64,000 bases of DNA, from the NCBI GenBank assembly GCA_002269645.1, contig NIVC01000158.1:372001-436000 (forward strand), in the 5' to 3' direction. The DNA comes from Macrostomum lignano (Eukaryota). Position numbers and translations under genes: made by a program. The notes under the pieces are model-generated. The model saw only the letters and a program-made list of their open reading frames with translations, was not told the DNA's origin and ran no database searches. Below, piece after piece: positions 38,456 through 64,000 of this stretch (position 1 is the stretch's first letter; each line of letters opens with the position of its first letter).

Positions 38456-39346
38456 CGTACCAGGCGCTTGTGCTTCTCAGCTCTTGAGTGACTAATAAGC
38501 CGAGAGATGCCTCCCTGAGAGACATCAATGCTGGTCTTGCAGACAAAGCATTCCGCCTCTGTTTCCGTGTCAACGCGCTTGCACCAAGTCTTTATCAATG
38601 TTCCATTTGAGTCGGTCTGCTGGAGCCAATCGGACCGAAATTTTGTTTTCGCTCATAACAATTATTCTGAAATTGAGGCACATAATTAGTCCCAAGTGCC
38701 AAGTCAGGTGGCTAATTACTGAATTTTGATTGCAAGATAAGGACCTTTGCTCAAAGCACTCTAAGGCTTCTAGCATTGCAATAATGTAATTTTGTTCCTT
38801 TACAGTTTTTTGCACATTTAAAATAGAATACTAATAATTCCTCTTAAGTAGTATATATTGCTTTTTATATAATGTATGTATTTATGTGTGTATAAAAGTC
38901 ATTTGGATGTAAAAAATCGACTCAACACGGAGGGCTGATGAAAATAAGACGTAGGGGTGGCATTTCTACTTTAATTGGTAATTGATTCGAAAATTAACTA
39001 TTGAAGAAATCAGAGACCCACTTGAATTGTACTATTTCTCTCCCTTTTATGGTATTTGTACCGGCTATTTTAAATTTAATTTGCTAAAGTGCACTGTTTC
39101 TACCTATCTGCTAGATTAAATGTATCGAAATGCAGAATTTGATTGCAGTTAAGCCCTATTACTAAAATAATGATAGACTATGGATTCTCTGCATTCTCCT
39201 TTCCTGCTACTATGCGTACGTTCTGTTTTCATTCTCTATCTGCAATTGGCGAGTCTCATTGGCGTTTCTCCCCCCCCCCTCCTCCCTCCTGCCCTGTCTC
39301 TCTCCAATGCCTGCTCTGGTTAGAACGGCTCAAAAGGTTTGTGCAG

Positions 39347-39539
39347 CGAGCCGGTCGAGTCTCCGCGACCCCAGCCGCCGCCTCCGCCGCCGCCGCCACC
39401 TGACAGGCGCTACGACCCGGCTAATTACTCTCTGCGCCTGCGGCAGCTCAGCAGCAACACTAGCGGCGGCCCTACAGCAGCACCTGCTGGCATTCCCAAC
39501 GGCAAGCGCCAGCCGCCTCCACCGCCGCCCCCACCGCCT

Positions 39540-39572
<33 letters not shown>

Positions 39573-42500
39573 CGCGTGATCACGCCATCAAATTTTCACG
39601 CCCCACCGCCTGCAGCCGTTCTGGCAGCCATGGCCGAGGAAACTCTCATGGCTGCCGCTGCAGCCGCCGCTGCCGCAGCTTCAAACAACGACGGGAAGCG
39701 TCGTCATAGCAACGGATCGTTCGAAGGTGACAAACCCGTACCGCCGGACGTGTCGCTGATTAATAGCAGGCACTACGGCTCCACGTCGAGTCTGGAGGCG
39801 TTGCAGAAGACTATGAGCAAGGTTTGCGCTTTCAATTGGTGCTTTTCTTAAGTGGGTGGTAAATATGGGGATGGAAAACTCCGGCCTGCGAAGCCTCTCT
39901 ATCTGGCCTTCTAGTGCCTGCGCGTGAAAAGTGGTTTAGTGAGAGAGAGGAACGGCCATAGACAACAACAACAACAAGGGTTGGGGTAACTCCTGGGGTT
40001 CACGAGAAGCAGTCAAAGTCATTAGCCGAGGGCCTGCGCGTGAAAAGTGGTTTAGTGAGAGAGAGGAACGGCTATAGACAACAACAGCAAGGGTTGGGGT
40101 AACTCTATGGATGAAGGAATAGAAAGATTCGCTCATCTGAAAGCGAATCTATGGCCAAAACCTAAAAATTAGGATCCATGAATTTCATTGGCTGATGGAA
40201 TTTAATAATAGTACCCCCTAAGTTCCTACTAGCTGAAGCTTGTACGCGAAGGAAATTCCAAATCCAAAGTCACGATTAACGTTAGACATCTTTAACTTCC
40301 TCTGGGCCACGACGGCTTAGGGGAAAGAAATTAGCATTTCCCCCGGGTACAAGCATCAGCCATTAAGAACTTAGGGGAGACTTATTAAACTCCAGCAGCC
40401 AATAAAATTCATGAGGGGGAATATCCCAATTTTTAGAAAGTCTTGGCCATAGACTCGCTTTCAGATGATCGATCCTTTCTATTCCTTCATCCATGGGTAA
40501 CTCCTGGAGTTCACGAGAGACAGTCAAAATCATCAGCCGAGGGCCTGCGCGTGAAAAGTGGTTTAGAGAAAGGAACGGCCATAGACAACAGCAAGGGTTG
40601 GGGTAACTCGTGCGGTTCACGAGAGACAGTCAAAGTCATCAGCCTGCAATAATGCTTGTAGCTAGACCATGTGGCTCTTGTACTATCTTGTCTCCATTGT
40701 TGAATGTACGTACAAGCGTATATTGGATTTTTCTTGCACAAAGCAGAATGGGGAGGCTTCGGAATAAGCGAGCTAGATCTAGAAGCAGACACGAGCAGGT
40801 AGCAATTAAATAGATTGAGTATCGCCCTCTCGAGTATGTAGCAGGTGCTGCGCAAGGCTTCTGGAGCGACCAAGGGAAAAATATCACGGCGGGGAAGCTA
40901 TACAGTCAGATCCTGCTGATAAAGCGCGTAATTTCTCTGTGTAGCCTTCTTCCTGTTAGTGAGTTTGCCTTTGTGTTCCCAACAGTAACAAGACTGACTG
41001 ATTAATCTTCAAATACTTTCTAGCTCTGCATCCGTTTGACTCGGCCTGTTCGACTAAAAGGGGGGGTCACTAGGGAAGCTAGAAATTCAGTCAGTCAAGT
41101 CCGCTTGCTCAGCAGCTAGCTTTTTACTTTATGTCTGAGGGATTGCAGGATTACAGTATGCAAGTTATTAATTGAAAATGGCTTGCGAATAATTATAAGC
41201 ACACAATATAGATCGATTGATGTATCGATATAATACACCGAATAGTTCGCTACTAGGTACGTAGGACAAACCATAAACAGAGCAGATTGATATGTACACA
41301 CGAGATGGATATACATACAGAAGATGGATATATACATACAGAAGATGGATATATGCATACAGAAGATGGATATATACATACAGAAGATAGACCTATACAT
41401 ACAGAAGATAGACCTATGCACATAGTAGATGGATATATACACAAGATGGATATATACATACAGAAGATGGATATATGCACACAAGATGGATATATACATA
41501 CAGAAGATGGATATATACATACAAAAGATGAATATATACATACAGAAGATGGATATATGCACACAAGATGGATATATACATACAGAAGATGGATATATAC
41601 ATACAGAAGATTGATATATACATACAAAAGATGAATATATACATACAGAAGATGGATATATGCACACAAGATGGATATATACATACAGAAGATGGATATA
41701 TACATACAGAAGATGGATATATGCACACAATATGGATATATGCATACAGAAGATGGATATATACACGCAGTAGATGGGTATATGCTTAGAAATGAGTGCA
41801 ATTACGAGTAATAGATGTCAGTAAGCCCGAATAAATGCACCCAAGCCAGCCGCAGCTTCTCACCCGCAATCCACGCCAGGTTCGCATATCCGACGATGTC
41901 TCTATTGAGCCTAATAGGCAGCCGCCCCAGCATCTGCGCAATTCCCAACAACAGAAGCAGCAGCAGCAGCATCAACAGCATAGCAAGCTGGGTTCTCAGC
42001 AGCAACACCAGCAGCAGCAGTTGCTGAGCCCCTCCCGACCCGAGCAAGCCAAAGCCGGCAGTTTCAGCCTGTTTAAAAGCTTTCGCAAGAATAATTCTCT
42101 AAGCGAATTGGAGACTCCGGCTAGTCAGGCCAGGGCCAGGCAGCTGTTAGCCCACTGGGACTGCCAGAGCGCCGCATGGCGCGCCGAGGACCTCCTCGCT
42201 GCTGCCGCTGTCGCCTCCAGTTCCGCTGCCGCCGCCGCTGCGGCCACTGCAGCTGTTGATGGCTCCGGCGATTATAGCGCTGGCTTCGGCGGCGGCGGCG
42301 GTTCAACATCGTCTGGTGCGGCGTCTCCACTGCAGCCTCAGCAGCAGCCCCATCCTGGTGGCAAGCAGTCGCCGCAGCTGCCGCCGCCGCCTCCTGCGCA
42401 GCCGCAGCCGCCTAAGCGTCGCAACACGGGCGCTTCAGCCGCCGCCGTTGCTCAGGCCAGCGAAGACGGCGGCGACGAGACCAGCGGAGGCTGCGGTCGC

Positions 42501-45500
42501 TCCTCAGATGATTCCAGTGCAGTCGGCGGCAGCAACGGCGGAGCCTGCGGCCTGCTGCTCCGCTGTCCGCATTTCGTTAACGAGCTTGGCGGCGAGCCAG
42601 TCCGAGTCTGCGCCCACACCCGCCTGACCTGCTCGCGTGTCTACGCGGCCTCCGCTGTGCCGCCGCCCCAGCAGCCCCTGCTGCCGCCGTCGGCTAATTC
42701 AGCCTGTTTGCTAGCCCAGCCGCTGCCCGGACACTGTCCGGAATTCGCAGACCTTGGCGCCTGCTATTACAGGCAGCATTTCCGTACATTCGACGATCAC
42801 ACTAATTGGTTCGGTCAGGACCCGGACCTGGGACCCCTGGCTGTCAGCCTGCGCCGGGAGAAGATCAGCAGCCAGGATGGGCAGTACTCCGGTCACCTGT
42901 GGCGCGTCATCATTCGGAGCGGCGAGTTGCGAGCACTGCGCGGCTGCATCCTGGAGGAGGCGGTGCCAACCCACAGTCGCTATTCGGCTAACAAGGGCCT
43001 GCCGCCGCGCGACGTGCTGCACTTTGTGGCTCCCCAGCTGCCGCTGTCCTGCCTGCACCTGGGCCGGTCGGAGCCGCGCGTCTGGGACGATCTAGTGGCT
43101 ATAGATGAACAGGTGCTAATTAATAAAATCAAAGTTGGCGTGCTGTTGTGCAAGGCTGGGCAGTCAACGGAAGAGGAAATGTATAATAATGGTGAGATTG
43201 TTTAAACTTCTTTACCTGCCAGTTTTGCTCAATTCATGGACCTCTGGAGATCTGGACTGGACTCAACCGGGGATTGTAGCCTAGTGGTTAGAGCGTCAGA
43301 CTCGCGACTGAAAGGTCGGGAGTTCGATTCTCGACCCACTCGCTCGGAACAATCTGTGTCCTTGAGCAATAACCATCTCGTCAATACATTTTGCAGGGGT
43401 TTGCAGCCTAGTAGGGATTTGAAGCCTCGTAGGGGTTTGTAGCCTAGTAGGGGTTTGCAGCCTAGTAGGGGTTGCAGCCTAGTAGGGGTTTGTAGCCTAG
43501 TAGGGGTTTGCAGCCTAGTAGGGGTTTGCAGCCTAGTAGGGGTTTGTAGCCTAGTAGGGGTTTGTAGCCTAGTAGGGGTTTGTAGCCTAGTAGGGGTTTG
43601 TAGCCTAGTAGGGATTTGCAATCTAGTAGGGCTTTGTAGCCTAGTAGGGGTTTGCAGCCTAGTAGGGGTTTGCAGCCTAGTAGGGGTTTGTAGCCTAGTA
43701 GGGGTTTGTAGCCTAGTAGGGGTTTGTAGCCTAGTAGGGGTTTGTAGCCTAGTAGGGGTTTGTAGCCTAGTAGGGATTTGCAATCTAGTAGGGCTTTGTA
43801 GCCTAGTAGGGGTTTGCAGCCTAGTAGGGGTTTGCAGCCTAGTAGGGGTTTGCAGTCTAGTAGGGGTTTGTAGCCTAGTAGGGGGTTGCAGTCTAGTAGG
43901 GGTTTGTAGTCTAGTAGGGGGTTGCAGTCTAGTAGGAGGTTGCAGTCTGGTAGGGGGTTGCAGTCTAGTAGGGGTTTGTAGTCTCGTAGAAGGTTGCAGT
44001 CTAGTAGGGGGTTGCAGTCTAGTAGGGGTTTGTAGCCTAGTAGGGGGTTGCAGTCTAGTAGGGGGTTGCAGTCTAGTAGGGGTTTGTAGCCTAGTAGGGG
44101 GTTGCAGTCTAGTAGGGGGTTGCAGTCTAGTAGGGGGTTGCAGTCTAGTAGGGGGTTGCAGTCTAGTAGGAGGTTGCAGTCTAGTAGGGGGTTGCAGTCT
44201 AGTAGGGGGTTGCAGTCTAGTAGGAGGTTGCAGTCTCGTAGAAGGTTGCAGTCTAGTAGGGGGTTGCAGTCTAGTAGGGGGTTGCAGTCTAGTAGATTGC
44301 AGTCTAGTAGGGGGTTGCACTCTAGTAGGGGGTTGCAGTCTAGTAGGGGGTTGCAGTCTAGTAGGAGGTTGCAGTCTAGTAGGAGGTTGCAGTCTCGTAG
44401 AAGGTTGCAGTCTAGTAGGGGGTTGCAGTCTAGTAGGGGGTTGCAGTCTAGTAGATTGCAGTCTAGTAGGGGGTTGCAGTCTAGTAGGGGGTTGCAGTCT
44501 AGTAGGGGGTTGCAGTCTAGTAGGAGGTTGCAGTCTAGTAGGAGGTTGCAGTCTAGTAGGGGGTTGCAGTCTAGTAGGGGGTTGCAGTCTAGTAGGGGTT
44601 TGCAGCCTAGTAGGGGTTTGTAGTCTAGTAGGAGGTTGCAGTCTAGTAGGGGGTTGCAGTCTAGTAGGGGGTTGCAGTCTAGTAGGAGGTTGCAGTCTAG
44701 TAGGAGGTTGCAGTCTAGTAGGGGGTTGCAGTCTAGTAGGGGGTTGCAGTCTAGTAGGGGTTTGCAGCCTAGTAGGGGTTTGTAGTCTAGTAGGAGGTTG
44801 CAGTCTAGTAGGGGGTTGGTAACTGAGGGTGTGTGTGGCGACCCCCCAGTCCTTGGACTGAACAGCCGTACGCTGATATTAACAGCCGAAAACCTTACTA
44901 TCGGAGGAGGCCTAAATGGTGAATATGTGCAGGGCCGGCTTCCAATCCAGGTCTTTAGCTGTAGAGGTCCGTGATCTAATATTTGTGCTCCGCTTCTTTT
45001 CGTGCCAACGGTGCACCGTCTTATCAATTAATCAATAAATCAATGTTTCAGAGCACACCAGCCCAGCTCTGGAGGAATTTATGGAACTAATTGCTACTAA
45101 AGTTTCGTTGAAAAATTTCGACAAATTCAAAGGCGGTTTGGACTCGAAGTGTGAGTATAAGACTTGGCGTGACGCAAATGTGGTACCGCTGCTCCTACCA
45201 AACGCTGTATACAGAGGGGTCTAGTTCTGAGCATATATGAGCGGGGAAAAGGGCCGCAAATAATCTCCGACCCTAGCAACACGGGGGGGGGTTATTAATC
45301 CTTTTGACTTCATTCTCTTTTTCTTCATCAGCGGCAGCAGAATGCTCCTCACACACACATGCGTCTCCCTCTCTCCAGCCGACAAAGGAAAACGCGGGGG
45401 AGGGAGTGAGATTAAGGCGGGGCAAATGCAGGGCAGGTAAGAATGCGGGATGAGCTGAGAAAGGGAAGGAAGAGAACTGAGTGGGGATTTTCGAATGCGG

Positions 45501-48500
45501 ACTTGCGGTACGCGGGCGGGCATCTGCGTGTAGGCAAGAGAGCTCGGGGTGTTTCGGCGTGTCAGTTTTCTTCTCGCCCTGATTTCAGCGGCGGCTGCTG
45601 TAAGACAGAAAGCGACGGTAAGGCAGGGATGCGGGGTACACAGAGGCTGAACGCTCGCTTCTCTATCTGCAGCCGCTTCTCCGCCTCAGTTTGCCGGTTT
45701 TGCTATTAACAGATTTCTAGTCTTGCTTTCGCATAGCTCTCCCCATTGCTTGCATGGGGGAAATGTTTTATACATTGCTTTGCTACTTAAATTTTGCTAC
45801 TGCGATAGTCTGTTTTGGGAAAGAGAGCTCTCTGCTCCGCTCTGCGCCATCTCTGTCTGTCCGTCTGCCTGTCTAATCTACTTGTCTCTGTGCCTGATCT
45901 ACCTGTCTGTGTTCCTGATCTACCTGTCTGTGTTCCTGATCTACCTGTCTGTGTGCCTGATCTACCTGTCTGTGTGCTTGATCTACCTGTCTGTGTTCCT
46001 GATCTACCTGTCTGTGTGCCTGATCTACCTGTCTGTGCCTGATCTACCTGTCTGTGTGCCTGATCTACCTGTCTGTGTTCCTGATCTACCTGTCTCTGTG
46101 CCTGATCTACCTGTCTGTGTTCCTGATCTACCTGTCTGTGCCTGATCTACCTGTCTGTGTGCCTGATCTACCTGTCTGTGTGCCTGATCTACCTGTCTGT
46201 GTTCCTGATCTACCTGTCTGTGTGCCTGATCTACCTGTCTGTGTGCCTGATCTACCTGTCTGTGTTCCTGATCTACCTGTCTGTGTGCCTGATCTACCTG
46301 TCTGTGCCTGATCTACCTGTCTGTGTTCCTGATCTACCTGTCTGTGTGCCTGATCTACCTGTCTGTGCGCCTGATCTACCGGTCTGTGTGCCTGATCTAC
46401 CTGTCTGTGTTCCTGATCTACCTGTCTGTGTGCCTGATCTACCTGTCTGTGTGCCTGATCTACCTGTCTGTGTTCCTGATCTACCTGTCTCTGTGCCTGA
46501 TCTACCTGTCTGTGCGCCTGATCTACCGGTCTGTGTGCCTGATCTACGTGTCTGTGTGCCTGATCTACCTGTCTGTGTTCCTGATCTACCTGTCTGTGCG
46601 CCTGATCTACCGGTCTGTGTGCCTGATCTACCTGTCTGTGTGCCTGATCTACCTGTCTGTGTTCCTGATCTACCTGTCTGTGCGCCTGATCTACCGGTCT
46701 GTGTGCCTGATCTACCTGTCTGTGTTCCTGATCTACCTGTTTGTGTGCCTGATCTACCTGTCTGTGTTCCTGATCTACCTGTCTGTGTGCCTGATCTACC
46801 TGTCTGTGTTCCTGATCTACCTGTCTGTGCGCCTGATCTACCGGTCTGTGTGCCTGATCTACCTGTCTGTGTGCCTGATCTACCTGTCTGTGTTCCTGAT
46901 CTACCTGTCTGCGCCTGATCTACCGGTCTGTGTGCCTGATCTACCTGTCTGTGTTCCTGATCTACCTGTTTGTGTGCCTGATCTACCTGTCTGTGTTCCT
47001 GATCTACCTGTCTGTGTGCCTGATCTACCTGTCTGTGTGCCTGATCTACCTGTCTGTGTGCCTGATCTACCTGCCTGTATCTCTCATTTCGGCCCGTAAC
47101 AGTGACTTCAAAGGATTATATGGGAATGCCTTATCTGACGTAAATGTCGGGGATCAGCTCAAAATAATACGCCTACGAGCAGCGAGAAGTTTAGTTTTAG
47201 TTTTTTTATTTAAAATAAAGTTACAACCAAGATTTCTAATATTAACACGAACAGAGAGGCAGATTTTTCTGCCGAACTAATGAGCACGAGATATCCGCGT
47301 GGCTCTCTAGAGAACAGTTAAAGTCATAAATTAGTTGGCCTTATTGTCAAATTTGTACTTTTATTTACATATATAGACTCTCGGTCTGTTGCCGGCAGGA
47401 GATGGCCAAGTAATTATCGTGCAGTGGATAGCAGTTCCTCATTTTTGTCAGTTTTCTCTCTATGTACAGGTTTTATAATCCCGTGACAGAAAGAAGATGT
47501 TTTGCTGATGGAGATCGATGGAAAGTTTAGCAGGGAGTTGGCCTAACTAGGCAATGCATATATACAGGCTATGAGACGCTGTGCGCCTCTTTCCCAACCG
47601 GTTGCTTCTCCCAACTACAATCGTCTCCTAGCATTAGCATTGGGAAGGTTAGGAATTAATAAGCGCACTATTTTTCTATGCCGCCAATGACTTTTCCTAA
47701 TGATTTTTATTGATTATATAATGTAGCACTTGTATAAGCAACTGGAATTGGGCGCTAGTCTGAGTCTGTCCTATTTTAATTTCTCGTCTACCGATCCCAG
47801 GTCCTCTACTAATCAATAAAATATTTCACATTAACTTTGCACTCTCGTGCCATCTCTTGTCTTACTCTACCCTCTCCCGTGTTCCTCTACCCTCTCCCGT
47901 GTTCCTCTACCCTCTCCCGTGTTCCTCTACCCTCTCCCGTGTTCGTCTACCCTCTCCCGTGTTCCTCTACCCTCTCCCGTGTTCGTCTACCCTCTCCCGT
48001 GTTGCTTTACCCTCTCCCGTGTTCCTTTACCCTCTCCCGTGTTCCTCTACCCTCTCCCGTGTTGCTTTACCCTCTCCCGTGTTCCTCTACCCTCTCCCGT
48101 GTTCCTCTACCCTCTCCCGTGTTCCTCTACCCTCTCCCGTGTTCCTCTACCCTTTCCCGTGTTCCTCTACCCTCTCCGTGTTCCTCTACCCTCTCCCGTG
48201 CTCCTCTACCCTCTCCCGTGTTCCTCTACCCTCTACTGCTTTCCTGTACCCTCCTGCCTTTTTTACCCTCTACCGTTTTCATTTGCCCTCTCCTGCCTTC
48301 CACTCTACTCTCTACACTGAACTGTCACACCAAACCGTCACACCTACAGGCACAGGCGATTACACTTATTATACTACTATGGGCGACTGCGAGCTGGTAT
48401 TCCACGTGTCCACCATGCTGCCCTATTCAAATACTAACCGGCAGCAGCTGCTGCGCAAGAAGCACATCGGTAACGATATCGTTACTATAGTGTTCCAGGA

Positions 48501-48815
48501 GCCGGGGGCTCTGGCGTTCTCTCCTAGAACGATTCGCAGCCAGTTCCAGCACGTGTTCATTGTGGTCCGGGCGCACAACCCCTGCACTAAGAAGCTCTAC
48601 TATTCGGTGGCCGTATCCCGCTCGGAGGAGATGCCGGCGTTTGGGCCGCCGTTCTCAGCTGGGCACCAGTTCGCCAGGGAGCCAGCGTTCAGGGAGTTCC
48701 TCCTGCGCAAGATCATCAACGGGGAAAACGCCGCGTTCAGGTGACTTGGAGTCGGGAACTAAGACAGACAGACAGAGGAGTACAGAGACAGACAGACAGA
48801 CAGACAGAGGAGTAC

Positions 48816-48850
<35 letters not shown>

Positions 48851-48863
48851 GGCAGACAGACAT

Positions 48864-48902
<39 letters not shown>

Positions 48903-51900
48903 GGCAGGCAGGCAGACAGACAGACACAGACAGACAGACAGGCAGACAGACAGATAGACAGGCAGACAGACAGACAGACAGACAGACAGACAGGCAGACA
49001 GACAGACAGGCAGGCAGGCAGGCAGACAGGCAGACAGACAGACACAGACAGACAGACAGGCAGGCAGGCAGACAGACAGACAGACAGACAGGCAGGCAGA
49101 CAGACAGACACACAGACAGAGAGACACTGAACAGACAAAGCAACACACTGCCAAGGTAATCACAAAACTTGCAGACCAACAAACAGACTAATACATAGGC
49201 TACTGACCAGTGCCAGTGGGCTTGACGCCATCCACCCCTCCCCTGACATGCCTCAGGTCAGAGAAGTTCTGCCAGATGCAGAAACGCACCCGTGAGGACC
49301 GGCTCAAGGAGCTGGCTGAGTCGCATTCCGCCGCCGCCACTATCGACATAAAATCGACGCGCTCTCTGCTCGGCAGCGGCCGGCGTCGCAGTTCCAAGTC
49401 GCTGACTGCAAGCAACGACGCCGTCAACCGACTGGTTGTTGAACTCAATGAAGCTCTGAGATTTGAAGTCACCCTGACCGAGCCTAACAATAGAGAGATG
49501 CGCTGCGACCTGCTTATTGGCCGCACTTACCTGGCCCTGCAGTACGGACAGCAGGTGAGGATTATGTTTTGTTTATAATTGACCGTTGGTTTATATTTTC
49601 TTTAAAAGTATTTACCCGATGAGAATCTCATTCTTAATGCTAATCGTCCCATCACTAAAGAGAATCTCCCCATCACCAGTAAGAATCGCCCCATTAACAA
49701 TGAGAATCGCCCCATTAACAATGAGAATCACCCCATCACCAATGAGAATCTCCCCATCACCAATGAGAATCTCCCCATCACCAGTAAGAATCGCCCCATT
49801 AACAATGAGAATCGCCCCATCACCAACGAGAATCTCCCCATCGCCAGTAAGAATCGCCCCATCATCAATGAGAATCGCCCCATCACCAATGAGAATCTCC
49901 CCATCACCAATGAGAATCGCCCATCACCAGTGAGAATCTCCCCCATCACCAATGAGAATCTCCCCCATCACCAATGAGAATCTCCCCCATCACCAATGAG
50001 AATCTCCCCCATCACCAATGAGAATCGCCCCATCACCAATGAGAATCTCCCCATCACCAGTAAGAATCGCCCCATCACCAACAAGAATCGCCCCATTAAC
50101 AATGAGAATCACCCGCATCACCAATGAGAATCTCCCCCATCACCAATGAGAACCGCCCCATCACCAATGAGAATCTCCCCCATCACCAATGAGAATCTCC
50201 CCCATCACCAATGAGAATCTCCCCATCACCAATGAGAACCGCCCCATCACCAATGAGAATCTCCCCATCACCAGTAAGAATCGCCCCATCACCAACAAGA
50301 ATCGCCCCATTAACAATGAGAATCACCCGCATCACCAATGAGAATCTCCCCCATCACCAATGAGAACCGCCCCATCACCAATGAGAATCTCCCCCATCAC
50401 CAATGAGAATCGCCCCATCACCAATGAGAATCTCCCCATCATCAATGAGAATCTCCCCCATCACCAATGAGAATCTCCCCATCACCAATGAGAATCTCCC
50501 CCATCACCAATGAGAATCTCCCCATCACCAATGAGAATCTCCCCCATCACCAATGAGAATCTCCCCCATCATCAATGAGAATCTCCCCCATCACCAATGA
50601 GAATCTCCCCATCACCAATGAGAATCTCCCCCATCACCAATGAGAATCTCCCCATCACCAATGAGAATCGCCCCATTAACAATGAGAACCGCCCTATTCC
50701 GAATCGCCCTTTAGCCCAACTCTGTTCCCAAAGCCAGCAGTTGCTATACCCGGCCAATTGGCCAATTCTCCAGGTGCTGCTATCGATCCCGACCGGCTGC
50801 ATGCTGTCGTGGCGCACAGGCCAGGCGGGAGAGCTCACTGTGTATTACAATCGCGGCGAGCTGCTCCGCATGCGCTGCTCAACCGAAACCGCCTGCCAGT
50901 TGGCGGCCCGCCGCCTGGCCTGGCTTGGCGAACAGGAAACCCCCGGCGCTTGCCAGGCCATCGAAGTCACGGTGCACCGCGTCACGGCCTACGAGGCCAG
51001 CCTGAGCTTCGGCGTACAAGCCGACGCTTTCTACGTTCGCTCTGTGGACTCGGCCGCCCTGCCGGACGTGGCTAAAAACTCTCGTTTAGTAGAATTGTGC
51101 GGCGTGCCGATCTGCGCCATGCCGGAGGCGCGCGTATTCAACCTGCTGCAGACCGAGGCCCAGCTGGCACTCGTGCTGGTGCCGCCAACTTCAAAAGGCG
51201 CCGTCCGTTGTTCGCAGGAGTTGCGCGATATTTTCCTGACTAATCGAGCGCACGCTCTGTTCTGCCCAGCCGGGGCTGCCGGCAGCGGACAGGGCAGCCC
51301 GGAGGTCGGCCCGGACCATGGCGACTGTCGCTTCCTGGATGCGTCTCTGCTGCGCAGCGGAGAAGCCGCGGTTTCCGGGTGAGAAATTCTTTTCTTTTCC
51401 ACTCAGGCAGATTCAATCCTCATTTGCCCTGTGGATATTTTCCCTTTGTTCATTCATCCGCCAACCCGATGGTGTAACCGGGTTCCCCTGCTGTTTGTGC
51501 CATGAGCAGCCTCGGGTTCCCCTGCTGTTTGTGCCATGAGCAGCCTCGGGTTCCCCTGCTGTTTGTGCCATGAGCAGCCTCGGGTTCCCCTGCTGTTTGT
51601 GCCATGAGCAGCCTCGGGTTCCCCTGCTGTTTGTGCCATGAGCAGCCTCGGGTTCCCCTGCTGTTTGTGCCATGAGCAGCCTCGGGTTCCCCTGCTGTTT
51701 GTGCCATGAGCAGCCTCGGGTTCCCCTGCTGTTTGTGCCATGAGCAGCCTCGGGTTCCCCTGCTGTTTGTGCCATGAGCAGCCTCGGGTTCCCCTGCTGT
51801 TTGTGCCTTGAGCAGCCTCGGGTTCCCCTGCTGTTTGTGCCTTGAGCAGCCTCGGGTTCCCCTGCTGTTTGTGCCATGAGCAGCCTCGGGTTCCCCTGCT

Positions 51901-53884
51901 GTTTGTGCCATGAGCAGCCTCGGGTTCCCCTGCTGTTTGTGCCTTGAGCAGCCTCGGGTTCCCCTGCTGTTTGTGCCTTGAGCAGCCTCGGGTTCCCCTG
52001 CTGTTTGTGCCTTGAGCAGCCTCGGGTTCCCCTGCTGTTTGTGCCTTGAGCAGCCTCGGGTTTGTCCCCGTTTTTATCTAATAATAAGATTCCGAATAAT
52101 GAATATCCTCTTTTTTGTATGACATTGATCTGTAAGGCATTGAGGCTTTCTCGGTGCAGGATGCATCGGTGCTATGCCTAGGCTATTGTATCTGTTTAAC
52201 AGAGCATGCAGGCAGGTGCATCCTGCCAGTTGAAAACTCGTTTTGCATGACAGAACAGGGATCTGCATCTGCCTACGTGTTTTGGTTGAATGGCATTTCT
52301 TAATTGCTGTCCATGATTTTTGCAGGGCAGCTCAAATTCTATCTTGGAACTTCCAGTGTCACTTTTTTTTATTAGAGGCAGGGGGGTTGTGTGCACCCTG
52401 GCGCACTTTAAGCGACATTGGCACACAACCGGCGAGAGGCATTGCTGCCCATTCCGCCGACTCCCCTGAGCAGGCATACAAGCGCGCGGATACGTACGCA
52501 GGCACACACTCACACAGGAGTGTACAGCGGCCCTAACTTTATATTATCGTTAGGCATGTACACTTCACTGCGCCTTGGGGGATTGGCTCTCAAGACCGTT
52601 AATTGCACGAGCAGAGCCAAGCCGAGATTCCAATTCAGCCCCAAATTAATGTGACTGCACTTGGAATCGAGCCTGGGTCGCTGGCACACCAGAGCCTGCG
52701 CTAGACCGCTGGGCTACGCCCCCCCCCGCTTCCAGTGTCACTACTTTTAGTAGCAGTGTTTGCGACAAAAGCAGATGTTTTTTTGCGAGCTGTTTTCCTT
52801 GCTTCATAAAGGTCTAATAAAAAACAGAGTTATCTCCCAGACTCCGGCCCTTCATCTGCCGGGACCTCATCCTCCCAGACTGGTTCTTCATCTGCCGGCT
52901 CCTCATTCTCCCAGACTGGTTCTTCATCTGCCGGCTCCTCATCCTCCCAGACTCCGGACCTTCATCTGGCTAGCACCTCATCCTCCCAGCCTCCGGCCCT
53001 TCATCTGGCTAGCACCTTCTCCTCCCAGACTTCGACCCTTCATCTGGCTAGCACCTTCTCCTCCCAGACTCCGGCCCTTCATCTGGCTAGCACCTCATCC
53101 TCCCAGCCTCCGGCCCTTCATCTGGCTAGCACCTTCTCCTCCCAGACTTCGACCCTTCATCTGGCTAGCACCTCATCCTCCTAGCCTCCGGCCCTTCATC
53201 TGGCTAGCACCTTCTCCTCCCAGACTTCGACCCTTCATCTGGCTAGCACCTCATCCTCCCAGCCTCCGGCCCTTCATCTGGCTAGCACCTTCTCCTTCCA
53301 GACTTCGACCCTTCATCTGGCTAGCACCTCATCCTCCCAGCCTCCGGCCCTTCATCTGGCTAGCACCTTCTCCTCCCAGACTTCGACCCTTCATCTGGCC
53401 GGCACCTCATCCTCCCAGCCTCCAATTCTTCTGCATCTCATTTAGTCGCCTATCTCACTGCAGCGGCTCTCCTATTCGAGCGCCGCCTACTCAGCAACAG
53501 CCGCATCAAGCGGCCAACACGCAGGAGAAGCTGAAGCGCCTCATCAACAATGAGATTAGCGAAGATCAGTTGCGTCGCGAAGACGACTGGAGCCAGCTGG
53601 TCCGCAGCGCCAACCAGTTCGCCGCGGCCGCCGCCAACTCAACCACTTCCTCTTCTAGCGGTCGCGGGACAGCGCAGAAGCAGCAGCCACGGTGCGGCCG
53701 CTGCCAGCAGCTCGAGGAGCAGCTCCGCGCCAGCGAGGCGGAGCGTCAGGCGCTGAAGCGTCGGCTAGTTGAATCGGCCGACGAGATTGAACGACTTCGG
53801 GCCCAAACAATGGAGGCTAAACAGGGCCTGATTCAGTTTACTGAGAAATTCTTCACTAGCATGGACACTCAGACTACATTGTGA
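39347..53884 (+). CDS. SIPA1L: SIPA1-like Rap GTPase-activating protein (RapGAP, PDZ, C-terminal coiled coil); exons ~39347-39821, ~41856/41880-43191, 45052-45150, 48350-48740, 49257-49554, 50774-51378, 53464-53884
   Basis: [64 protein letters not shown] (Asn thumb), [15 protein letters not shown], terminal FTEKFF. The start codon and the exon 2 acceptor are uncertain. Confidence 0.93.
39915..40645. repeat. About 120-bp tandem repeat (3 full units plus a partial one), interrupted by a MITE
   Basis: GCCTGCGCGTGAAAAGTGGTTTAG..GGGTTGGGGTAACTC repeated. Confidence 0.85.
40106..40495. mobile_element. hAT-type MITE (390 bp)
   Basis: About 140-bp imperfect TIRs starting (T/C)ATGGATGAAGGAATAGAAAG; 8-bp TSD GGTAACTC. 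Confidence 0.85.
41290..41780. repeat. About 21-bp minisatellite AGATGGATATATACATACAGA
   Basis: Tandem array in SIPA1L intron 1. Confidence 0.92.
43269..45044 (+). mobile_element. SINE family 1 copy (head 43269-43370, tail 44816-45044) split by an 18-bp satellite
   Basis: tRNA-like head with A/B boxes, TGTGTCCTTGAGCAA, tail GTGTGGCGACCCCCC..AACAGCCGTACGC shared with the 28-kb copy, TCAAT-rich end. Confidence 0.8.
43397..44815. repeat. 18-bp minisatellite GGGG(G/T)TTG(C/T)AG(C/T)CTAGTA, about 75-80 units
   Basis: Tandem array whose unit resembles the SINE 5' end. Confidence 0.95.
45880..47075. repeat. 21-bp minisatellite TGCCTGATCTACCTGTCTGTG
   Basis: Tandem array. Confidence 0.95.
47865..48235. 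repeat. 20-bp minisatellite TCTACCCTCTCCCGTGTTCC
   Basis: Tandem array. Confidence 0.95.
48762..49135. repeat. (GACA/GGCA)n microsatellite
   Basis: Direct reading. Confidence 0.95.
49620..50700. repeat. 21-22-bp minisatellite CACCAATGAGAATCTCCCCAT
   Basis: Tandem array. Confidence 0.95.
51480..52062. repeat. 34-bp minisatellite GGGTTCCCCTGCTGTTTGTGCCATGAGCAGCCTC
   Basis: Near-perfect tandem array. Confidence 0.95.
52364..52728 (-). mobile_element. SINE family 2, full length
   Basis: Reverse complement of the 37766 copy; poly(A) tail; 13-14-bp TSD CTTCCAGTGTCAC(T). Confidence 0.9.
52835..53420. repeat. 39-bp minisatellite CCTCCCAGACTCCGGCCCTTCATCTGGCTAGCACCTCAT and variants
   Basis: Tandem array ending about 40 bp before the last SIPA1L acceptor. 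Confidence 0.92.
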
Positions 53885-57110: not shown

Positions 57111-57554
57111 CCATCTATTTTTGCTTGCACCTACTTCAGTATCTCTCCCTTCTATCTCACTAGTGGATCGCAGTGCTCACAGAGGGTTCTATCACAGCAA
57201 GTAAGGCTGTCCTTGATACTGAGCAATGATATCCAAAAGCTAGATTGGCGTTGTACCGTCACTGCATGCAATGGGGCCAGAACTGAAGCATTGTGCTGCT
57301 CATCTTGCAAACAGATGTCAAAGCCAAGTGTTGCTGCTTACAGCTTTGCAGCAATAAATTGGCAAAAAGTTTCCCACTGTAAAGCAAACAAGTCATTAGC
57401 GAAATTTCTATAATCGGGACTTCTCGTCAGGTTCGCATTTCATTTTTATCTTTGATTGTCTTTGCTTTTTTACTATGCAAAACTTCAACCTCTGTTCAGC
57501 TGTTTCAGTTGATTCGCTTGTCACTATTTGCAATTTTTCTTGAATTTACACTAT

Positions 57555-58808
57555 CACCTGAGCTCTCATCCTTCTTTTGAGCTCTCACTATCACCTGAGT
57601 TCTCACTCTCTGCCGAGCTCTCACTATCGAATGAGTTCTCACTCTCTCCCGAGCTCTCACTATCACCTGAGTTCTCACTCTCTCCCGAGCTCTCACTATC
57701 ATCTGAGTTCTCACTCTCTCCCGAGCTCTCACTATCGAATGAGTTCTCACTCTCTCCCGAGCTCTCACTATCATCTGAGTTCTCACTCTCTCCCGAGCTC
57801 TCACTATCACCTGAGTTCTCACTCTCTCCCGAGCTCTCACTATCGAATGAGTTCTCACTCTCTCCCGAGCTCTCACTATCATCTGAGTTCTCACTCTCTC
57901 CCGAGCTCTCACTATCACCTGAGTTCTCACTCTCTCCCGAGCTCTCACTATCGAATGAGTTCTCACTCTCTCCCGAGCTCTCACTATCATCTGAGTTCTC
58001 ACTCTCTCCCGAGCTCTCACTATCACCTGAGTTCTCACTCTCTCCCGAGCTCTCACTATCGAATGAGTTCTCACTCTCTCCCGAGCTCTCACTATCATCT
58101 GAGTTCTCACTCTCTCCCGAGCTCTCACTATCACCTGAGTTCTCACTCTCTCCCGAGCTCTCACTATCATCTGAGTTCTCACTCTCTCCCGAGCTCTCAC
58201 TATCATCTGAGTTCTCACTCTCTCCCGAGCTCTCACTATCATCTGAGTTCTCACTCTCTCCCGAGCTCTCACTATCACCTGAGTTCTCACTCTCTCCCGA
58301 GCTCTCACTATCATCTGAGTTCTCACTCTTTCCCGAGCTCTCACTATCGAATGAGTTCTCACTCTCTCCCGAGCTCTCACTATCATCTGAGTTCTCACTC
58401 TCTCCCGAGCTCTCACTATCATCTGAGTTCTCACTCTTTCCCGAGCTCTCACTATCGAATGAGTTCTCACTCTCTCCCGAGCTCTCACTATCATCTGAGT
58501 TCTCACTCTCTCCCGAGCTCTCACTATCACCTGAGTTCTCACTCTCTCCCGAGCTCTCACTATCATCTGAGTTCTCACTCTCTCCCGAGCTCTCACTATC
58601 ATCTGAGTTCTCACTCTCTCCCGAGCTCTCACTATCATCTGAGTTCTCACTCTCTCCCGAGCTCTCACTATCATCTGAGTTCTCACTCTTTCCCGAGCTC
58701 TCACTATCATCTGAGTTCTCACTCTCTCCCGAGCTCTCACTATCATCTGAGTTCTCACTCTCTCCCGAGCTCTCACTATCATCTGAGTTCTCACTCTCTC
58801 CCGAGCTG
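57555..58808. repeat. 36-bp minisatellite (a diverged 18-bp dimer) GAGCTCTCACTATCATCTGAGTTCTCACTCTCTCCC
   Basis: Tandem array. Confidence 0.95.
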
Positions 58809-58887
58809 CATTCAATCCTCCTGAGTTGAGAATGGCTACCAATAGCATTGCTGAGCTCCATCTATATAATTTTCTAGAATGCAAATT

Positions 58888-58930
58888 CCTTTTGCCAAGC
58901 CGGCAGTAAACTGGCTCTTTGCAGGTTTTC
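58888..58930 (-). CDS. Candidate downstream exon of the neuropeptide precursor, encoding (R)K-TCKEPVYCRL-G-KR
   Basis: CAG acceptor at 58933-58931 is phase-compatible with the donor at 61704 and creates dibasic sites around a Cys-bridged, Gly-extended peptide. The exon's 3' end is unresolved. Confidence 0.45.
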
Positions 58931-59679
58931 CTGTACATTTATATGGCCAGCGGTGTGTCTGAGGACCATTTTTCAACGCAGCCCCGGGGGCAATCTATCA
59001 TCAGCTTGGGAGATTTTCGCAGCAAAGGCGCCGGTTTCGCTATTCATGAGCTCTCGTGTGTCTGCAGTGCCGGTGGTGCGACACCCGATCCTTGATTAGC
59101 TGCTTAAGCCGCTCGCCTCCTTTCCCTTACCCCCGTGTCTAGGATTTGGGACGCTGTTAGCATTGGCAATAAAAATCTTTAGCTGCGCGCGTGTACGAGT
59201 ATACAATTTCTCACAGTTGGAGCTGGTGAAGATGCAAGAATTCTCGCACATTGTACCTATCTGCGCACTTCTGCTCATGGCATCTGGGCATTTTCTCTAA
59301 CTGCTTCGGTAATGAACTTGTTATCAGGGCCAAGAAACTGGCAGATTTCAGATCTCTGCCGCCTGTCTCCGGGGAGCCTGTCTGCTTAGAGATTGAAATC
59401 GAAATTCACATGAGTTCCTTAAATTAGCTGTCTTGCGGGAAATGCAAAGCTGTTAGGATTCTGTGTGTGCAGCATTGCGTGATTCACTGATTGCCAATTA
59501 TCCTGATTTTTCCCTCTTCGATCCGCAAAAAAACGTTGCTTTTAACAATATTCTCCATCGAAGCATGCTGCTGAGCATCGTTGCGAAGCAGTGACGGGGG
59601 CACAAGTGACTCATGATTGCGAAACTGTGAGAAGAAAATGACTCGACATGACTGTTACCATGACTTACAAGTCTCCGAC

Positions 59680-60720
59680 CATGAGTCACCTGTGCCCCTC
59701 ACCGCTCACCAACCATGAGTCACCTGTGCCCATCACCGCTCACCAACCATGAGTCACCTGTGCCCATCACGGCTCACCAACCATGAGTCACCTGTGCCCA
59801 TCACGGCTCACCAACCATGAGTCACCTGTGCCCATCACGGCTCACCAACCATGAGTCACCTGTGCCCGTCACCGCTCACCAACCATGAGTCAACTGTGCC
59901 CCTCACCGCTCACCAACTAAGAGTGACCTGTGCCCCTCACCGCTCACCAACCATGAGTCAACTGTGCCCCTCACCGCTCACCAACTAAGAGTGACCTGTG
60001 CCCATCACCGCTCACCAACCATGAGTCAACTGTGCCCCTCACCGCTCACCAACTAAGAGTGACCTGTGCCCATCACCGCTCACCAACCATGAGTCACCTG
60101 TGCTCAATACCGCTCACCAACCATGAGTCACCTGTGCCCCTCACCGCTCACCAACCATGAGTGACCTGCGCCCCTCACCGCTCACCAACCAGGAGTGACC
60201 TGTGCCCATCACCGCTCACCAACCATGAGTGACCTGTGCCCATCACCGCTCACCAACCATGAGTCACCTGTGCCCCTCACCGCTTACCAACCATGAGTCA
60301 CCTGCGCTCAATACCCCTTACGAACCATGAGTCACCTGTGCCCATCACCGCTCACCAACCATGAGTCACCTGTGCCCCTCACTGCTCACCAACCATGAGT
60401 CACCTGTGCCCCTCACTGCTCACCAACCATGAGTCACCTGTGGCCATCACCGCTCACGAACCATGAGTCACCTGTGCTCAATACCGCTCACCAACCATGA
60501 GTCACCTGTGCTCAATACCGCTCACGAACCATGAGTCACCTGTGCCCCTCACTGCTCACCAACCATGAGTCACCTGTGGCCATCACCGCTCACGAACCAT
60601 GAGTCACCTGTGCTCAATACCGCTCACCAACCATGAGTCACCTGTGCTCAATACCGCTCACCAACCATGAGTCACCTGTGCTCAATACCGCTCACGAACC
60701 ATGAGTCCCCTGTGCCCCTT
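59680..60720. repeat. 34-bp minisatellite ACCAACCATGAGTCACCTGTGCCCATCACCGCTC
   Basis: Tandem array. Confidence 0.95.
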
Positions 60721-61104
60721 TCTGCTCACCAACCAGACGCGAACATGCAAATTCGCAGTGTATTTAGAGAGTCAAATTATGAAAAAACCAAGCCAAAGAC
60801 AGGAACTGAAGATGAAGCGTTTGAATTTTGCCGGATTTTCTGCTATAACAATTATTAAATTTCCAAGGCGAGATTTTCCTGCAATTTCTCAGTTTATCTG
60901 CTATGTGGTGGGAAAAATTGGCGGCATTTTCAATTCCGCTTAGATTAACAGCTGTTTTACTTTCACACCGAAAAAGTTCACGGAATTCCGTACATGTGAT
61001 GCTGACGTCCTATCTGAAATTTTTTGTGATAGCCAGTCATAAATATCCGCTCTGTATAGGAGAAACAAAAATATCTCGAGTTTACGAGTAGAGTCAAAAA
61101 CGAG

Positions 61105-61678
61105 AACAGTCTAGCAATCCAGAACACACAGTCTAGCAATCCAGAACACACAGTCTAGCAATCCATCATGCAGTCTAGCAATCCAGAACACACAGTCTAG
61201 CAATCCATCATACAGTCTAGCAATCCAGCATGCAGTCTAGCAATCCAGCATGCACAGTCTAGCAATCCAGCATGCACAGTCTAGCAATCCAGCATGCACA
61301 GTCTAGCAATCCAGCATGCAGTCTAGCAATCCAGCATGCACAGTCTAGCAATCCAGCATTCAGTCTAGCAATCCAGCATGCAGTCTAGCAATCCAGAACA
61401 CACAGTCTAGCAATCCAGCATGCAGTCTAGCAATCCAGCATGCAGTCTAGCAATCCATCATGCAGTCTAGCAATCCAGCATTCAGTCTAGCAATCCATCA
61501 TACAGTCTAGCAATCCATCATGCAGTCTAGCAATCCAGAACACACAGTCTAGCAATCCAGCATGCAGTCTAGCAATCCAGCATTCAGTCTAGCAATCCAG
61601 CATGCAGTCTAGCAATCCAGCATGCAGTCTAGCAATCCAGCATGCAGTCTAGCAATCCAGCATGCAGTCTAGCAATCC
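61105..61678. repeat. 20-22-bp minisatellite CAGTCTAGCAATCCAGCATG
   Basis: Tandem array. Confidence 0.95.
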
Positions 61679-61691
61679 TCAATCGTAAATA

Positions 61692-61964
61692 TCAGTAGCC
61701 GCACCTTCCATAGTTGCTTCCGAACCTCAGGCTGTTTCTAAAGCCTCTCTTTTCTGCCTGGGCGGCGGCCCTCTGCCTCAGCAGCGACAGCAGCAGGGCC
61801 TCCTCATCATCCGCCCACTGCTGATCGCTCAGTCGGGCAGCGCCTTCGGCTTCGGCCGCCTCCACGGCAGCACCTGAAGCCGAACGGCCTTCAGCGGGGC
61901 TCCACAGGGCGACTGCGAGCACCAGGAGCAGCGGCAGGACGAGCTTCGGGACTGGGCACTTCAT
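61692..61964 (-). CDS. Neuropeptide precursor, main coding exon (signal peptide, acidic spacer, KR-GFRNSLRFGSNY-G-R)
   Basis: Hydrophobic signal MKCPVPKLVLPLLLVLAVALWSPAEG, acidic spacer, KR site, Gly amide donor. GC-rich coding style. Possible donor AG/GTGCGG at 61705/61704. Confidence 0.85.
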   Translation of the reverse strand: MKCPVPKLVLPLLLVLAVALWSPAEGRSASGAAVEAAEAEGAARLSDQQWADDEEALLLSLLRQRAAAQAEKRGFRNSLRFGSNYGRCGY

Positions 61965-63700: not shown

Positions 63701-64000
63701 GAAAGAGCGATAATTTAAGGAAAACAGTGAAAATGTTGTGTGGGTGGAGAGAGTATAAAGAGAGAAAACAATCAGTGTAAATATGGAAACTCTCTGAAAT
63801 TGCGGAACAAAGAGCTTTCAGTGCCAGCATTGAGTTGCTTTCATTTTTGCGACTCAATGGATTTGGTATTGCCAGCAGAAAAAAAAATACTAAAATAAAT
63901 TGTCTTCAGTGTGCCAGTTTCAGATTTCGCAGGCACTCAGCTGCAGTTTTCTATCTTACAATGGAAGATGCAGGATTCTTGCACGCTTTGATGAGCTCTT

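What the first reader, a model, noticed from the sequence alone, without database searches (positions are those of the whole stretch)
58888..61964. Neuropeptide precursor that, when spliced, yields two different amidated peptides, one linear and one disulfide-bridged
Seen: the ORF track ends the gene at ..NYGRCGY*, but a phase-2 donor (GGA AG/GTGCGG, 61705) fits a phase-2 acceptor 2.77 kb away (TACAG/G, 58930). The join gives KR-GFRNSLRFGSNY-G-RK-TCKEPVYCRL-G-KR, creating a dibasic site exactly after the amide-donor Gly. Two minisatellites fill the interval, as in the other introns here. Known: KR/RK cleavage plus Gly gives C-terminal amides. Peptide 1 resembles allatotropin (mollusc GFRANSASRVAHGYa) and is a 12-mer like SIFamide (GYRKPPFNGSIFa). 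Peptide 2 has C-x5-C spacing as in CCAP but no sequence I recognise. Inference: a novel two-peptide precursor that gene finders would truncate.
Basis: partly seen in the sequence, partly recalled or inferred. Interest (0 to 1): 0.72.

Follow-up and report, generated by a model that had tools for sequence, protein, structure and literature searches.

The report
Flatworm single-peptide neuropeptide gene; second peptide unsupported
This is a real, already annotated small gene of the flatworm Macrostomum lignano that most likely makes one amidated, allatotropin-like neuropeptide; the proposed long splice that would add a second, disulfide-bridged peptide has no support and looks like a chance match.

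Summary
The window is Macrostomum lignano (GenBank contig NIVC01000158.1). The phase-2 donor AG|GTGCGG at 61705 is real. But the transcript-based GenBank model joins it to an acceptor only 691 nt away (TTTCAG|A TAG, exon 2 starts at 61013), so the protein ends ...SNYGR*, 87 aa.

- **Conservation of the short splice:** the donor, the minisatellite intron, the acceptor and the immediate stop are kept in a 77%-identical tandem paralogue (GFRGTLRFASNYGR*). They are also kept in all six copies at three homeologous loci.
- **The distal "exon" (58930..58888):** it has no stop; the frame runs 477 codons through a 36-bp minisatellite. The paralogue has no counterpart. One homeologue loses the dibasic site (GKR to GKM) and another is frameshifted. 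It matches no protein in 5.8 billion.
- **Chance:** the "R[KR]...G[KR][KR]" pattern appears in 76% of shuffled controls.

Peptide 1 stands and peptide 2 does not. Peptide 1 resembles lophotrochozoan allatotropins more than SIFamide, but family membership is unproven. Interest is low to moderate.

The parts
61705..61964 (-). Exon 1, coding part (ATG 61964; 86 codons plus the first 2 nt of the Arg-87 codon).
   Evidence: Translation. It is 100% identical to GenBank-derived protein P0001 (87 aa).
61887..61964 (-). Predicted signal peptide (about 26 aa, MKCPVPKLVLPLLLVLAVALWSPAEG).
   Evidence: Judged by inspection: a basic N-terminal region, a hydrophobic core, and small residues at -3/-1. No signal-peptide predictor was run. 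Nearly identical in the paralogue.
61746..61751 (-). Lys-Arg prohormone-convertase site just before the peptide.
   Evidence: The pro-region EEALLLSLLRQRAAAQAEKR is identical in the paralogue, with 4 synonymous and 0 non-synonymous changes.
61710..61745 (-). Peptide 1, GFRNSLRFGSNY, predicted to be C-terminally amidated.
   Evidence: The paralogue has GFRGTLRFASNY (9 of 12 identical); dN 0.145 against dS 0.72.
61707..61709 (-). Gly-86, the amide donor.
   Evidence: The role follows from established peptidylglycine alpha-amidating monooxygenase (PAM) chemistry; this is inference.
61014..61704 (-). Phase-2 intron of 691 nt (GTGCGG...TTTCAG), mostly the 20-bp minisatellite at 61107..61678.
   Evidence: Deduced from the GenBank gene range of 955 nt for an 87-aa product. 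Repeat array. Donor and acceptor are kept in all six copies.
61010..61013 (-). Coding start of exon 2: A (completes AGA = Arg-87) plus the TAG stop.
   Evidence: The paralogue has A + TAA at the same place.
60840..61009 (-). Presumed 3' UTR. AATAAT at 60856..60851 aligns with an AATAAA in the paralogue.
   Evidence: Alignment. The extent is inferred, not shown.
59678..60735 (-). 34-bp minisatellite downstream of the stop (late 3' UTR or intergenic), not intronic in the annotated model.
   Evidence: It is shared with the paralogue's downstream region, and the tandem-duplication homology ends here.
58888..58930 (-). Unsupported and most likely non-coding.
57549..58807 (-).
   Evidence: The array is only about 170 bp long in homeologue L004.

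Best explanation
**What it is.** A two-exon gene of Macrostomum lignano that encodes an 87-residue preprohormone carrying a single bioactive peptide.

**Proposed processing.**
- The signal peptide (about 26 aa) is removed.
- A prohormone convertase cuts after Lys72-Arg73.
- The reading frame ends at ...Tyr-Gly-Arg*, so no C-terminal endoproteolysis is needed.
- A carboxypeptidase E-type enzyme trims Arg87, and peptidylglycine alpha-amidating monooxygenase (PAM) uses Gly86 to give GFRNSLRFGSNY-NH2.

**Gene structure.** The Arg87 codon is split by a 691-nt phase-2 intron (AG|GTGCGG...TTTCAG|A). This intron is mostly a 20-bp minisatellite, and TAG follows the junction at once. If the intron is retained the product is ..GRCGY*, which gives the same peptide by monobasic cleavage, so peptide 1 does not depend on splicing. 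A tandem paralogue 4.3 kb upstream, outside the window, gives GFRGTLRFASNY-NH2 in the same way.

**Likely function.** The peptide is most likely a neuronal ligand for a G-protein-coupled receptor (GPCR). Its best match is lophotrochozoan allatotropin (GFR...aromatic-amide).

**Shown versus inferred.** Shown: the gene structure, its conservation, and purifying selection. Inferred: processing, amidation, neuronal expression and receptor type.

**Sub-probabilities.** Gene structure as stated, about 0.9. Amidated signalling peptide, about 0.75. True allatotropin/orexin-family orthologue, about 0.4-0.45.
For: - **Gene range fits one structure only.** The GenBank gene at this locus has an 87-aa product ending SNYGR and a range of exactly 955 nt, 61964..61010. 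Only 260 nt of exon 1 plus A-TAG at 61013..61010 fits this.
- **The annotation rests on transcripts.** It was built from RNA-seq alignments, StringTie/TACO assemblies and a mapped de novo transcriptome, with ORFs called by TransDecoder (PMC5730564).
- **The same structure recurs.** The homeologous copy PAA48489.1 (locus L003, range 791 nt) ends ..TTTCAGATAG. The 77%-identical paralogue PAA89243.1 ends ..TTTCAGATAA.
- **All six copies agree.** Every copy at the three loci keeps AACTATGGAAG|GTGCGGCT and CACAAAAAATTTCAG|ATA[G/A]GGACG. The acceptor block is an island of identity in otherwise poorly alignable flanks.
- **Purifying selection between paralogues.** Pro-region dN 0 against dS 0.28; peptide dN 0.145 against dS 0.72.
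- **No longer isoform is recorded.** The look-up keeps the longest product of a gene, and that product is 87 aa.
- **Similarity to allatotropins.** Permutation p is 0.002-0.02 against lophotrochozoan allatotropins, and 0.08-0.5 against SIFamide, for both paralogues.
- **Literature context.** Allatotropin-like immunoreactivity, using an antiserum to APFRNSEMMTARGF, is reported in Macrostomorpha (PMC3797082). Allatotropin-type receptors are reported in a fluke (PMC6114109). An orexin/allatotropin precursor is reported in a polyclad flatworm (PMC10396302).
Against: - I could not see RNA-seq reads, so the junction is known only through the annotation.
- Multi-mapping reads could copy the same evidence among homeologues. 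This cannot apply to the diverged paralogue.
- The donor GTGCG departs from the species' enriched GT[G/A]AG motif (PMC8629364).
- No homologue outside M. lignano was found by either protein search, and there is no Pfam family. The neuropeptide status and the allatotropin link therefore rest on motif logic and short-peptide similarity.
- The allatotropin panel was mostly recalled from memory, and its p-values are not corrected for the number of families one could compare.
- The C-terminus SNYamide lacks the [RH]-G-[FY]amide of allatotropins, and the peptide is 12 residues long, not 13-14.
Confidence: 0.8

Rival explanations
1. The donor at 61705 splices to the acceptor at 58931/58930 across a 2.77-kb intron, giving a precursor with GFRNSLRFGSNY-NH2 plus disulfide-bridged TCKEPVYCRL-NH2, either as the main form or as a minor isoform.
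For: - The join is in frame and creates G-RK and G-KR sites with a Cys pair.
- Requiring two Cys, only 5-10% of shuffles give such a candidate.
- In homeologue L004 a 1-nt deletion happens to supply a stop 8 codons after the KR.
- The GenBank annotation dropped transcripts that overlap repeat annotations, so a rare isoform could have been filtered out.
Against: - In the window the frame has no stop for 477 codons and runs through a minisatellite.
- The annotated transcripts use the acceptor at 61014/61013 and stop at once.
- The paralogue has no homologous segment, because duplication homology ends at the 34-bp array.
- L003 has GKM instead of GKR, and L004 shifts the frame. The segment is no better conserved than its flanks.
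- No protein in 5.8 billion shares even three 5-residue words with it.
- 76% of shuffles give an equivalent dibasic/amidation candidate.
- A likely poly(A) signal lies about 155 nt after the annotated stop (inferred).
Confidence: 0.04
2. The UniProt/ML2-assembly model (A0A1I8JLV7). The same donor joins an acceptor near 59625 (CTCACAG|T), giving ...NYGSFAIMSHLCPP..., a 129-aa secreted protein with no amidated peptide 1.
For: The predicted protein P0002 exists in UniProt.
Against: - In the window a 1-nt difference puts that continuation in another frame (one search compared).
- ML2-derived predictions at this locus disagree with each other and include obvious fusions (P0010 and P0011).
- The paralogue has no homologue of that segment.
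- The model would destroy the conserved G-R processing site.
Confidence: 0.03
3. The gene is real, but its product is not a neuropeptide. It could be a small secreted protein or peptide with another role, such as glandular, adhesive or antimicrobial, and the KR...GR motif is incidental.
For: - There are no homologues outside the species and no domain.
- Expression site and mature product were not observable here.
- The pro-region is more conserved than the peptide.
Against: - The architecture is textbook for an amidated peptide: signal peptide, acidic spacer, KR, a 12-mer, Gly, a basic residue, stop.
- That architecture is preserved in a paralogue that has diverged elsewhere, including an 11-codon indel in the spacer.
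- The N-terminal GFR and the C-terminal aromatic residue before Gly match a known peptide family.
Confidence: 0.13

Closest known systems
Allatotropin / allatotropin-related peptide (orexin-type family), e.g. Aedes APFRNSEMMTARGF-NH2 (PMC3797082) and mollusc GFR(A/L)NSASRVAHGY-NH2
   Same: - A single-copy peptide placed after a spacer and a KR site.
- An N-terminal G-F-R followed by N-S.
- A C-terminal aromatic residue followed by Gly and a basic residue, which implies amidation.
- The best permutation scores of the families tried.
- Allatotropin-like immunoreactivity is reported in Macrostomorpha.
   Different: - 12 residues, not 13-14.
- The C-terminus is S-N-Y-amide, not [RH]-G-[FY]-amide.
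- The precursor ends right after G-R, with no C-terminal extension.
- No significant database similarity.
- The receptor has not been tested.
SIFamide ((A/G)YRKPPFNGSIF-NH2)
   Same: A 12-mer with G/aromatic/R at positions 1-3 and G-S-x-aromatic-amide at the C-terminus.
   Different: - SIFamide directly follows the signal peptide, and its precursor carries a Cys-containing C-terminal peptide. Here a spacer of about 46 aa precedes the peptide and nothing follows it.
- Similarity is not above shuffles (p 0.08-0.5).
GenBank M. lignano hypothetical proteins PAA48489.1 (BOX15_Mlig008911g2) and PAA89243.1 (BOX15_Mlig024750g1)
   Same: These are the homeologous copy and the tandem paralogue of the window's gene, with the same two-exon structure ending GR*.
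   Different: They are annotated only as hypothetical proteins. UniProt's automatic names for the assembly-ML2 copies ("TKN1 protein", "Gastrin domain-containing protein") are not backed by any Pfam match.
   Same: C-x5-C spacing and a following Gly in the hypothetical translation.
   Different: - The second Cys is not C-terminal.
- There is no sequence similarity.
- The segment is not shown to be expressed or conserved.

Membership tests
Amidated neuropeptide preprohormone (generic) | N-terminal signal peptide | tested here: inconclusive
   The sequence shows the classic charged N-terminal, hydrophobic and small-residue cleavage regions and is conserved in the paralogue. No dedicated predictor was available.
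Amidated neuropeptide preprohormone (generic) | Peptide flanked by a dibasic site upstream and by Gly plus a basic residue (or the precursor end) downstream | tested here: met
   KR-GFRNSLRFGSNY-G-R*. The paralogue has the same layout.
Amidated neuropeptide preprohormone (generic) | Purifying selection on the peptide and its processing sites | tested here: met
   KR, G and R are invariant; peptide dN/dS is about 0.2; the pro-region has 0 non-synonymous and 4 synonymous changes. Counts are small.
Amidated neuropeptide preprohormone (generic) | Mature amidated peptide present in tissue, with neuronal or endocrine expression | not testable with these tools
   Needs LC-MS/MS and in situ hybridisation.
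Allatotropin/orexin-type peptides | N-terminal G-F-[KR] directly after the cleavage site | tested here: met
   KR|GFR in both paralogues.
Allatotropin/orexin-type peptides | C-terminal [RH]-G-[FY]-amide (TARGFa in arthropods, PMC4357254; HG[FY]a in lophotrochozoans, from my own knowledge) | tested here: not met
   The C-terminus is S-N-Y-(Gly). Only the aromatic amide is shared.
Allatotropin/orexin-type peptides | Statistically supported sequence similarity to family members | tested here: inconclusive
   Permutation p is 0.002-0.02 for lophotrochozoan allatotropins, uncorrected, with a panel mostly recalled from memory. Database searches found no family member and there is no Pfam hit.
Allatotropin/orexin-type peptides | Activates an orexin/allatotropin-type GPCR | not testable with these tools
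   Needs a receptor assay. Allatotropin-like receptors are reported in the fluke Fasciola (PMC6114109).
SIFamide | Peptide immediately follows the signal peptide | tested here: not met
   About 46 residues of spacer plus KR precede the peptide.
SIFamide | Precursor carries a C-terminal associated peptide with two Cys (from my own knowledge) | tested here: not met
   The annotated product ends at GR*. The only Cys-pair candidate is the unsupported distal segment.
CCAP-type (peptide 2) | An expressed, conserved exon encoding a C-x5-C amidated peptide | tested here: not met
   The frame has no stop; the segment is absent from the paralogue; it reads GKM in L003 and is frameshifted in L004; no protein matches it.

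The most novel reading that the evidence does not exclude
A rare isoform does use the distal acceptor at 58930. In the homeologue L004 a 1-nt deletion supplies a stop eight codons after the KR, so one gene copy could yield both the linear amide and a cyclic TCKEPVYCRL-NH2. That would be a very young second peptide recruited from intergenic DNA between minisatellites.

Separately, and much more probably (about 0.4), peptide 1 and its paralogue are the missing molecular identity of the allatotropin-like signal seen immunologically in macrostomid flatworms.
Probability: 0.04. Interest if true: 0.5.

Novelty: new member of a known kind. Interest (0 to 1): 0.27.

Why it matters
The two-peptide precursor would have been a modest curiosity, but it does not hold up.

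What remains is a tandem pair of tiny genes, triplicated by the hidden polyploidy of M. lignano. Public databases call them "hypothetical". They most likely encode amidated GFRxxLRFxSNY-NH2 peptides.

If these are allatotropin/orexin-type ligands, they would:
- give a sequence to the allatotropin-like immunoreactivity reported in Macrostomorpha;
- give a ligand to test on flatworm allatotropin-type receptors, in a flatworm where transgenesis works.

Methodologically, this is a clear example of how, in a minisatellite-rich genome, an in-frame "dibasic plus Gly" pattern after a distant AG is expected by chance. It also shows that paralogue and homeologue comparison settles the question quickly.

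Tried and rejected
- **Literature search for the peptide strings.** GFRNSLRFGSNY, TCKEPVYCRL, GFRGTLRF and others gave no paper.
- **McVeigh et al. 2009, flatworm neuropeptides.** Not held.
- **Planarian prohormone paper.** It contains no GFR.. or ..NYamide peptide.
- **Polyclad allatotropin sequence.** Not in the held supplement.
- **HMMER search of 1.84 billion representative proteins with the conserved 37-aa C-terminus.** Only M. lignano proteins came back.
- **Pfam.** Nothing matched the precursor, with or without the hypothetical exon 2.
- **Exact look-up of the unspliced 90-aa product.** Not in the collection.
- **Splice-site strength.** Both acceptors are CAG with 9 of 18 pyrimidines upstream, so intrinsic site strength does not separate them. 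I did not build a species position-weight matrix, because the last large protein search was not worth spending on it.
- **Rfam and tRNA scans of the window.** Nothing found.
- **Minisatellites as an intron marker.** Rejected, because arrays are equally common in intergenic DNA here.
Full report
**1. What the sequence shows**

The gene is on the minus strand. From ATG 61964 the ORF reads MKCPVPKLVLPLLLVLAVALWSPAEGRSASGAAVEAAEAEGAARLSDQQWADDEEALLLSLLRQRAAAQAEKRGFRNSLRFGSNYGRCGY*.

- Joining them gives ...NYGRKTCKEPVYCRLGKR... as stated.
- Two minisatellites lie between them: 20-bp units at 61107..61678 and 34-bp units at 59678..60735.

It runs on through 35 copies of a 36-bp minisatellite (RERVRTQMIVRA repeated) to 57505, which is a 477-codon ORF.

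**2. Organism and existing annotation**

A protein search with exon 1 found only Macrostomum lignano proteins. The window lies on GenBank contig NIVC01000158.1 of assembly GCA_002269645.1.

The gene called there has an 87-aa product ending ...SNYGR and a range of exactly 955 nt. Counting from ATG 61964, that range ends at 61010. Exon 1 supplies 260 nt, so the remaining 4 nt must be A plus TAG. These follow ...ACAAAAAATTTCAG at 61013..61010.

The annotated structure is therefore:
- donor at 61705;
- a 691-nt phase-2 intron that holds only the 20-bp minisatellite;
- acceptor at 61014/61013;
- an Arg codon split AG|A, followed at once by a stop.

This annotation comes from RNA-seq alignments, StringTie/TACO assemblies and a mapped de novo transcriptome, with ORFs called by TransDecoder (PMC5730564). 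The junction is therefore transcript-derived, although I could not inspect the reads. The look-up keeps the longest product of each gene, so no longer isoform is annotated here.

**3. Comparative test**

*Paralogue.* A tandem paralogue sits 4.3 kb upstream, outside the window (locus L002 10001-10565; PAA89243.1; 76 aa...KRGFRGTLRFASNYGR). Its exon 1 is 77% identical, with an 11-codon indel in the spacer. It still has the same donor (TATGGAAG|GTGCGGCT), an intron made of the same minisatellite family, and the same acceptor, followed by A TAA.

*Homeologues.* Two further homeologous loci (L003 on NIVC01004133.1 and L004 on NIVC01004341.1) each carry the tandem pair.
- All six gene copies keep the donor and CACAAAAAATTTCAG|ATA[G/A]GGACG.
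- In an alignment of the two paralogues' downstream regions, this acceptor-plus-stop block is an island of identity in otherwise poorly alignable sequence.
- The stop differs (TAG against TAA) but its position does not.

- The tandem-duplication homology ends at the 34-bp minisatellite, and no TCKEPVYCRL-like segment exists near the paralogue.
- In L003 the segment reads CRLGKM, so the Arg of the closing dibasic site is lost.
- In L004 a 1-nt deletion 30 nt further on changes the frame.
- The segment is no better conserved than its flanks.
- No protein among 5.8 billion shares even three 5-residue words with it. That database includes both public M. lignano gene sets.

**4. Chance**

Downstream of the donor, as far as the neighbouring Rap-GAP gene, there are 971 AG dinucleotides. 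With a phase-2 donor ending in AG:
- 637 give Arg at the junction;
- 47 give R[KR];
- 5 give R[KR], then 3-40 residues, then G[KR][KR].

Dinucleotide-preserving shuffles give on average 1.8 such candidates, and 76% of shuffles give at least one. If exactly two Cys are also required, 5-10% do. That criterion was chosen after seeing the sequence. The "dibasic site created exactly after the Gly" is thus an expected by-product of scanning many acceptors.

Minisatellites are no guide either. The window has about 24 arrays, including four in the annotated intergenic stretch 53.9-59 kb.

**5. What peptide 1 is**

The architecture is signal peptide, acidic spacer, an amphipathic conserved pro-region, KR, a 12-mer, Gly, Arg, stop. 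This is a standard amidated-peptide precursor.

Between the paralogues:
- the pro-region EEALLLSLLRQRAAAQAEKR has 4 synonymous and 0 non-synonymous changes;
- the peptide has dN 0.145 against dS 0.72;
- the counts are small, but they point to constraint.

Because the frame ends at G-R*, only carboxypeptidase trimming and PAM are needed at the C-terminus. That is inference from established processing rules. Intron retention (..GRCGY*) would give the same peptide.

*Family assignment.*
- Pfam gives nothing.
- HMMER against 1.84 billion representative proteins finds only M. lignano.
- In a permutation test, both paralogous peptides score best against lophotrochozoan allatotropins (p 0.002-0.02) and not against SIFamide (p 0.08-0.5) or CCAP.
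- Most panel sequences were recalled from memory, and the p-values are uncorrected, so this is a lead and not a proof.
- The defining allatotropin C-terminus ([RH]-G-[FY]-amide; TARGFa in arthropods, PMC4357254) is not met.

*Literature context.*
- Allatotropin-like immunoreactivity is reported in Macrostomorpha, using an antiserum against APFRNSEMMTARGF. That sequence shares FRNS with peptide 1 (PMC3797082).
- Allatotropin-type receptors were found in Fasciola, with the ligand "not yet reported in flatworms" in 2018 (PMC6114109).
- An orexin/allatotropin precursor is reported in a polyclad flatworm (PMC10396302; PMC13551398).
- Planarians lack a recognisable allatotropin (PMC3890597).
- No held paper contains either peptide string.

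**6. Verdict**

It is wrong about the acceptor, the intron length and the second peptide.

The gene model is already in GenBank as a hypothetical protein. What is new is only the functional reading: an allatotropin-like amidated peptide gene pair. Interest is low to moderate.

Noticed in passing
L002 10001-10565 (4.3 kb upstream of the gene, beyond window position 64000); also L003 about 5870-6400 and L004 about 5676-6570: A tandem paralogue of the peptide gene (GFRGTLRFASNYGR*). The whole pair is present at three homeologous loci of the assembly, which fits the hidden polyploidy of the DV1 line.
   Followed up: yes
window 11308-13500 and 19459-21304 (+): A tandem pair of genes with a Temptin_C domain plus Cu2_monooxygen and Cu2_monoox_C domains, the enzyme family of dopamine beta-hydroxylase and the peptide-amidating hydroxylase PHM. 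Each copy is preceded by the same 23-bp minisatellite. I did not test whether either is the peptide-amidating enzyme.
   Followed up: partly
window 2858-4675 (-): An uninterrupted 605-aa ORF for a piggyBac-type transposase (DDE_Tnp_1_7, E = 3.5e-61, plus its zinc finger). It may be an active or domesticated element.
   Followed up: partly
window 35831-37415 (-), within the AT-rich block at 32-36 kb (GC 27-31%): Two overlapping ORFs with a hAT-family dimerisation domain: a frameshifted hAT transposase remnant in a stretch whose base composition differs sharply from the rest of the window.
   Followed up: partly
window 39339-53884 (+): A Rap-GAP gene (SIPA1L-like; 1207 aa in GenBank). The stretches between its coding ORFs are filled with minisatellites (periods 18-39 bp), which produce many long spurious ORFs on both strands.
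   Followed up: partly
window 57549-58807; L004 about 13357-13523: The 36-bp minisatellite has about 35 copies in the window and in L003, but only about 170 bp in homeologue L004. The intron's 20-bp array also differs in length (intron 691 nt here, 527 nt in L003, 334 nt in the paralogue).
   Followed up: partly
UniProt A0A1I8GA24, A0A1I8F6M8, A0A1I8JNP7, A0A1I8JLV7 (proteins P0008, P0009, P0010, P0002): Public names for copies of this gene ("TKN1 protein", "Gastrin domain-containing protein", "Calmodulin") are automatic, or come from fused or indel-ridden ML2-assembly models. No Pfam family matches the precursor.
   Followed up: yes
window 57566-58861 (-): In another frame, the same 36-bp minisatellite gives a 431-aa acidic Ser-rich ORF (SGESENSDDSES repeated) that starts at an ATG just outside the array. 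No gene is annotated there, and it is probably mechanical.
   Followed up: no
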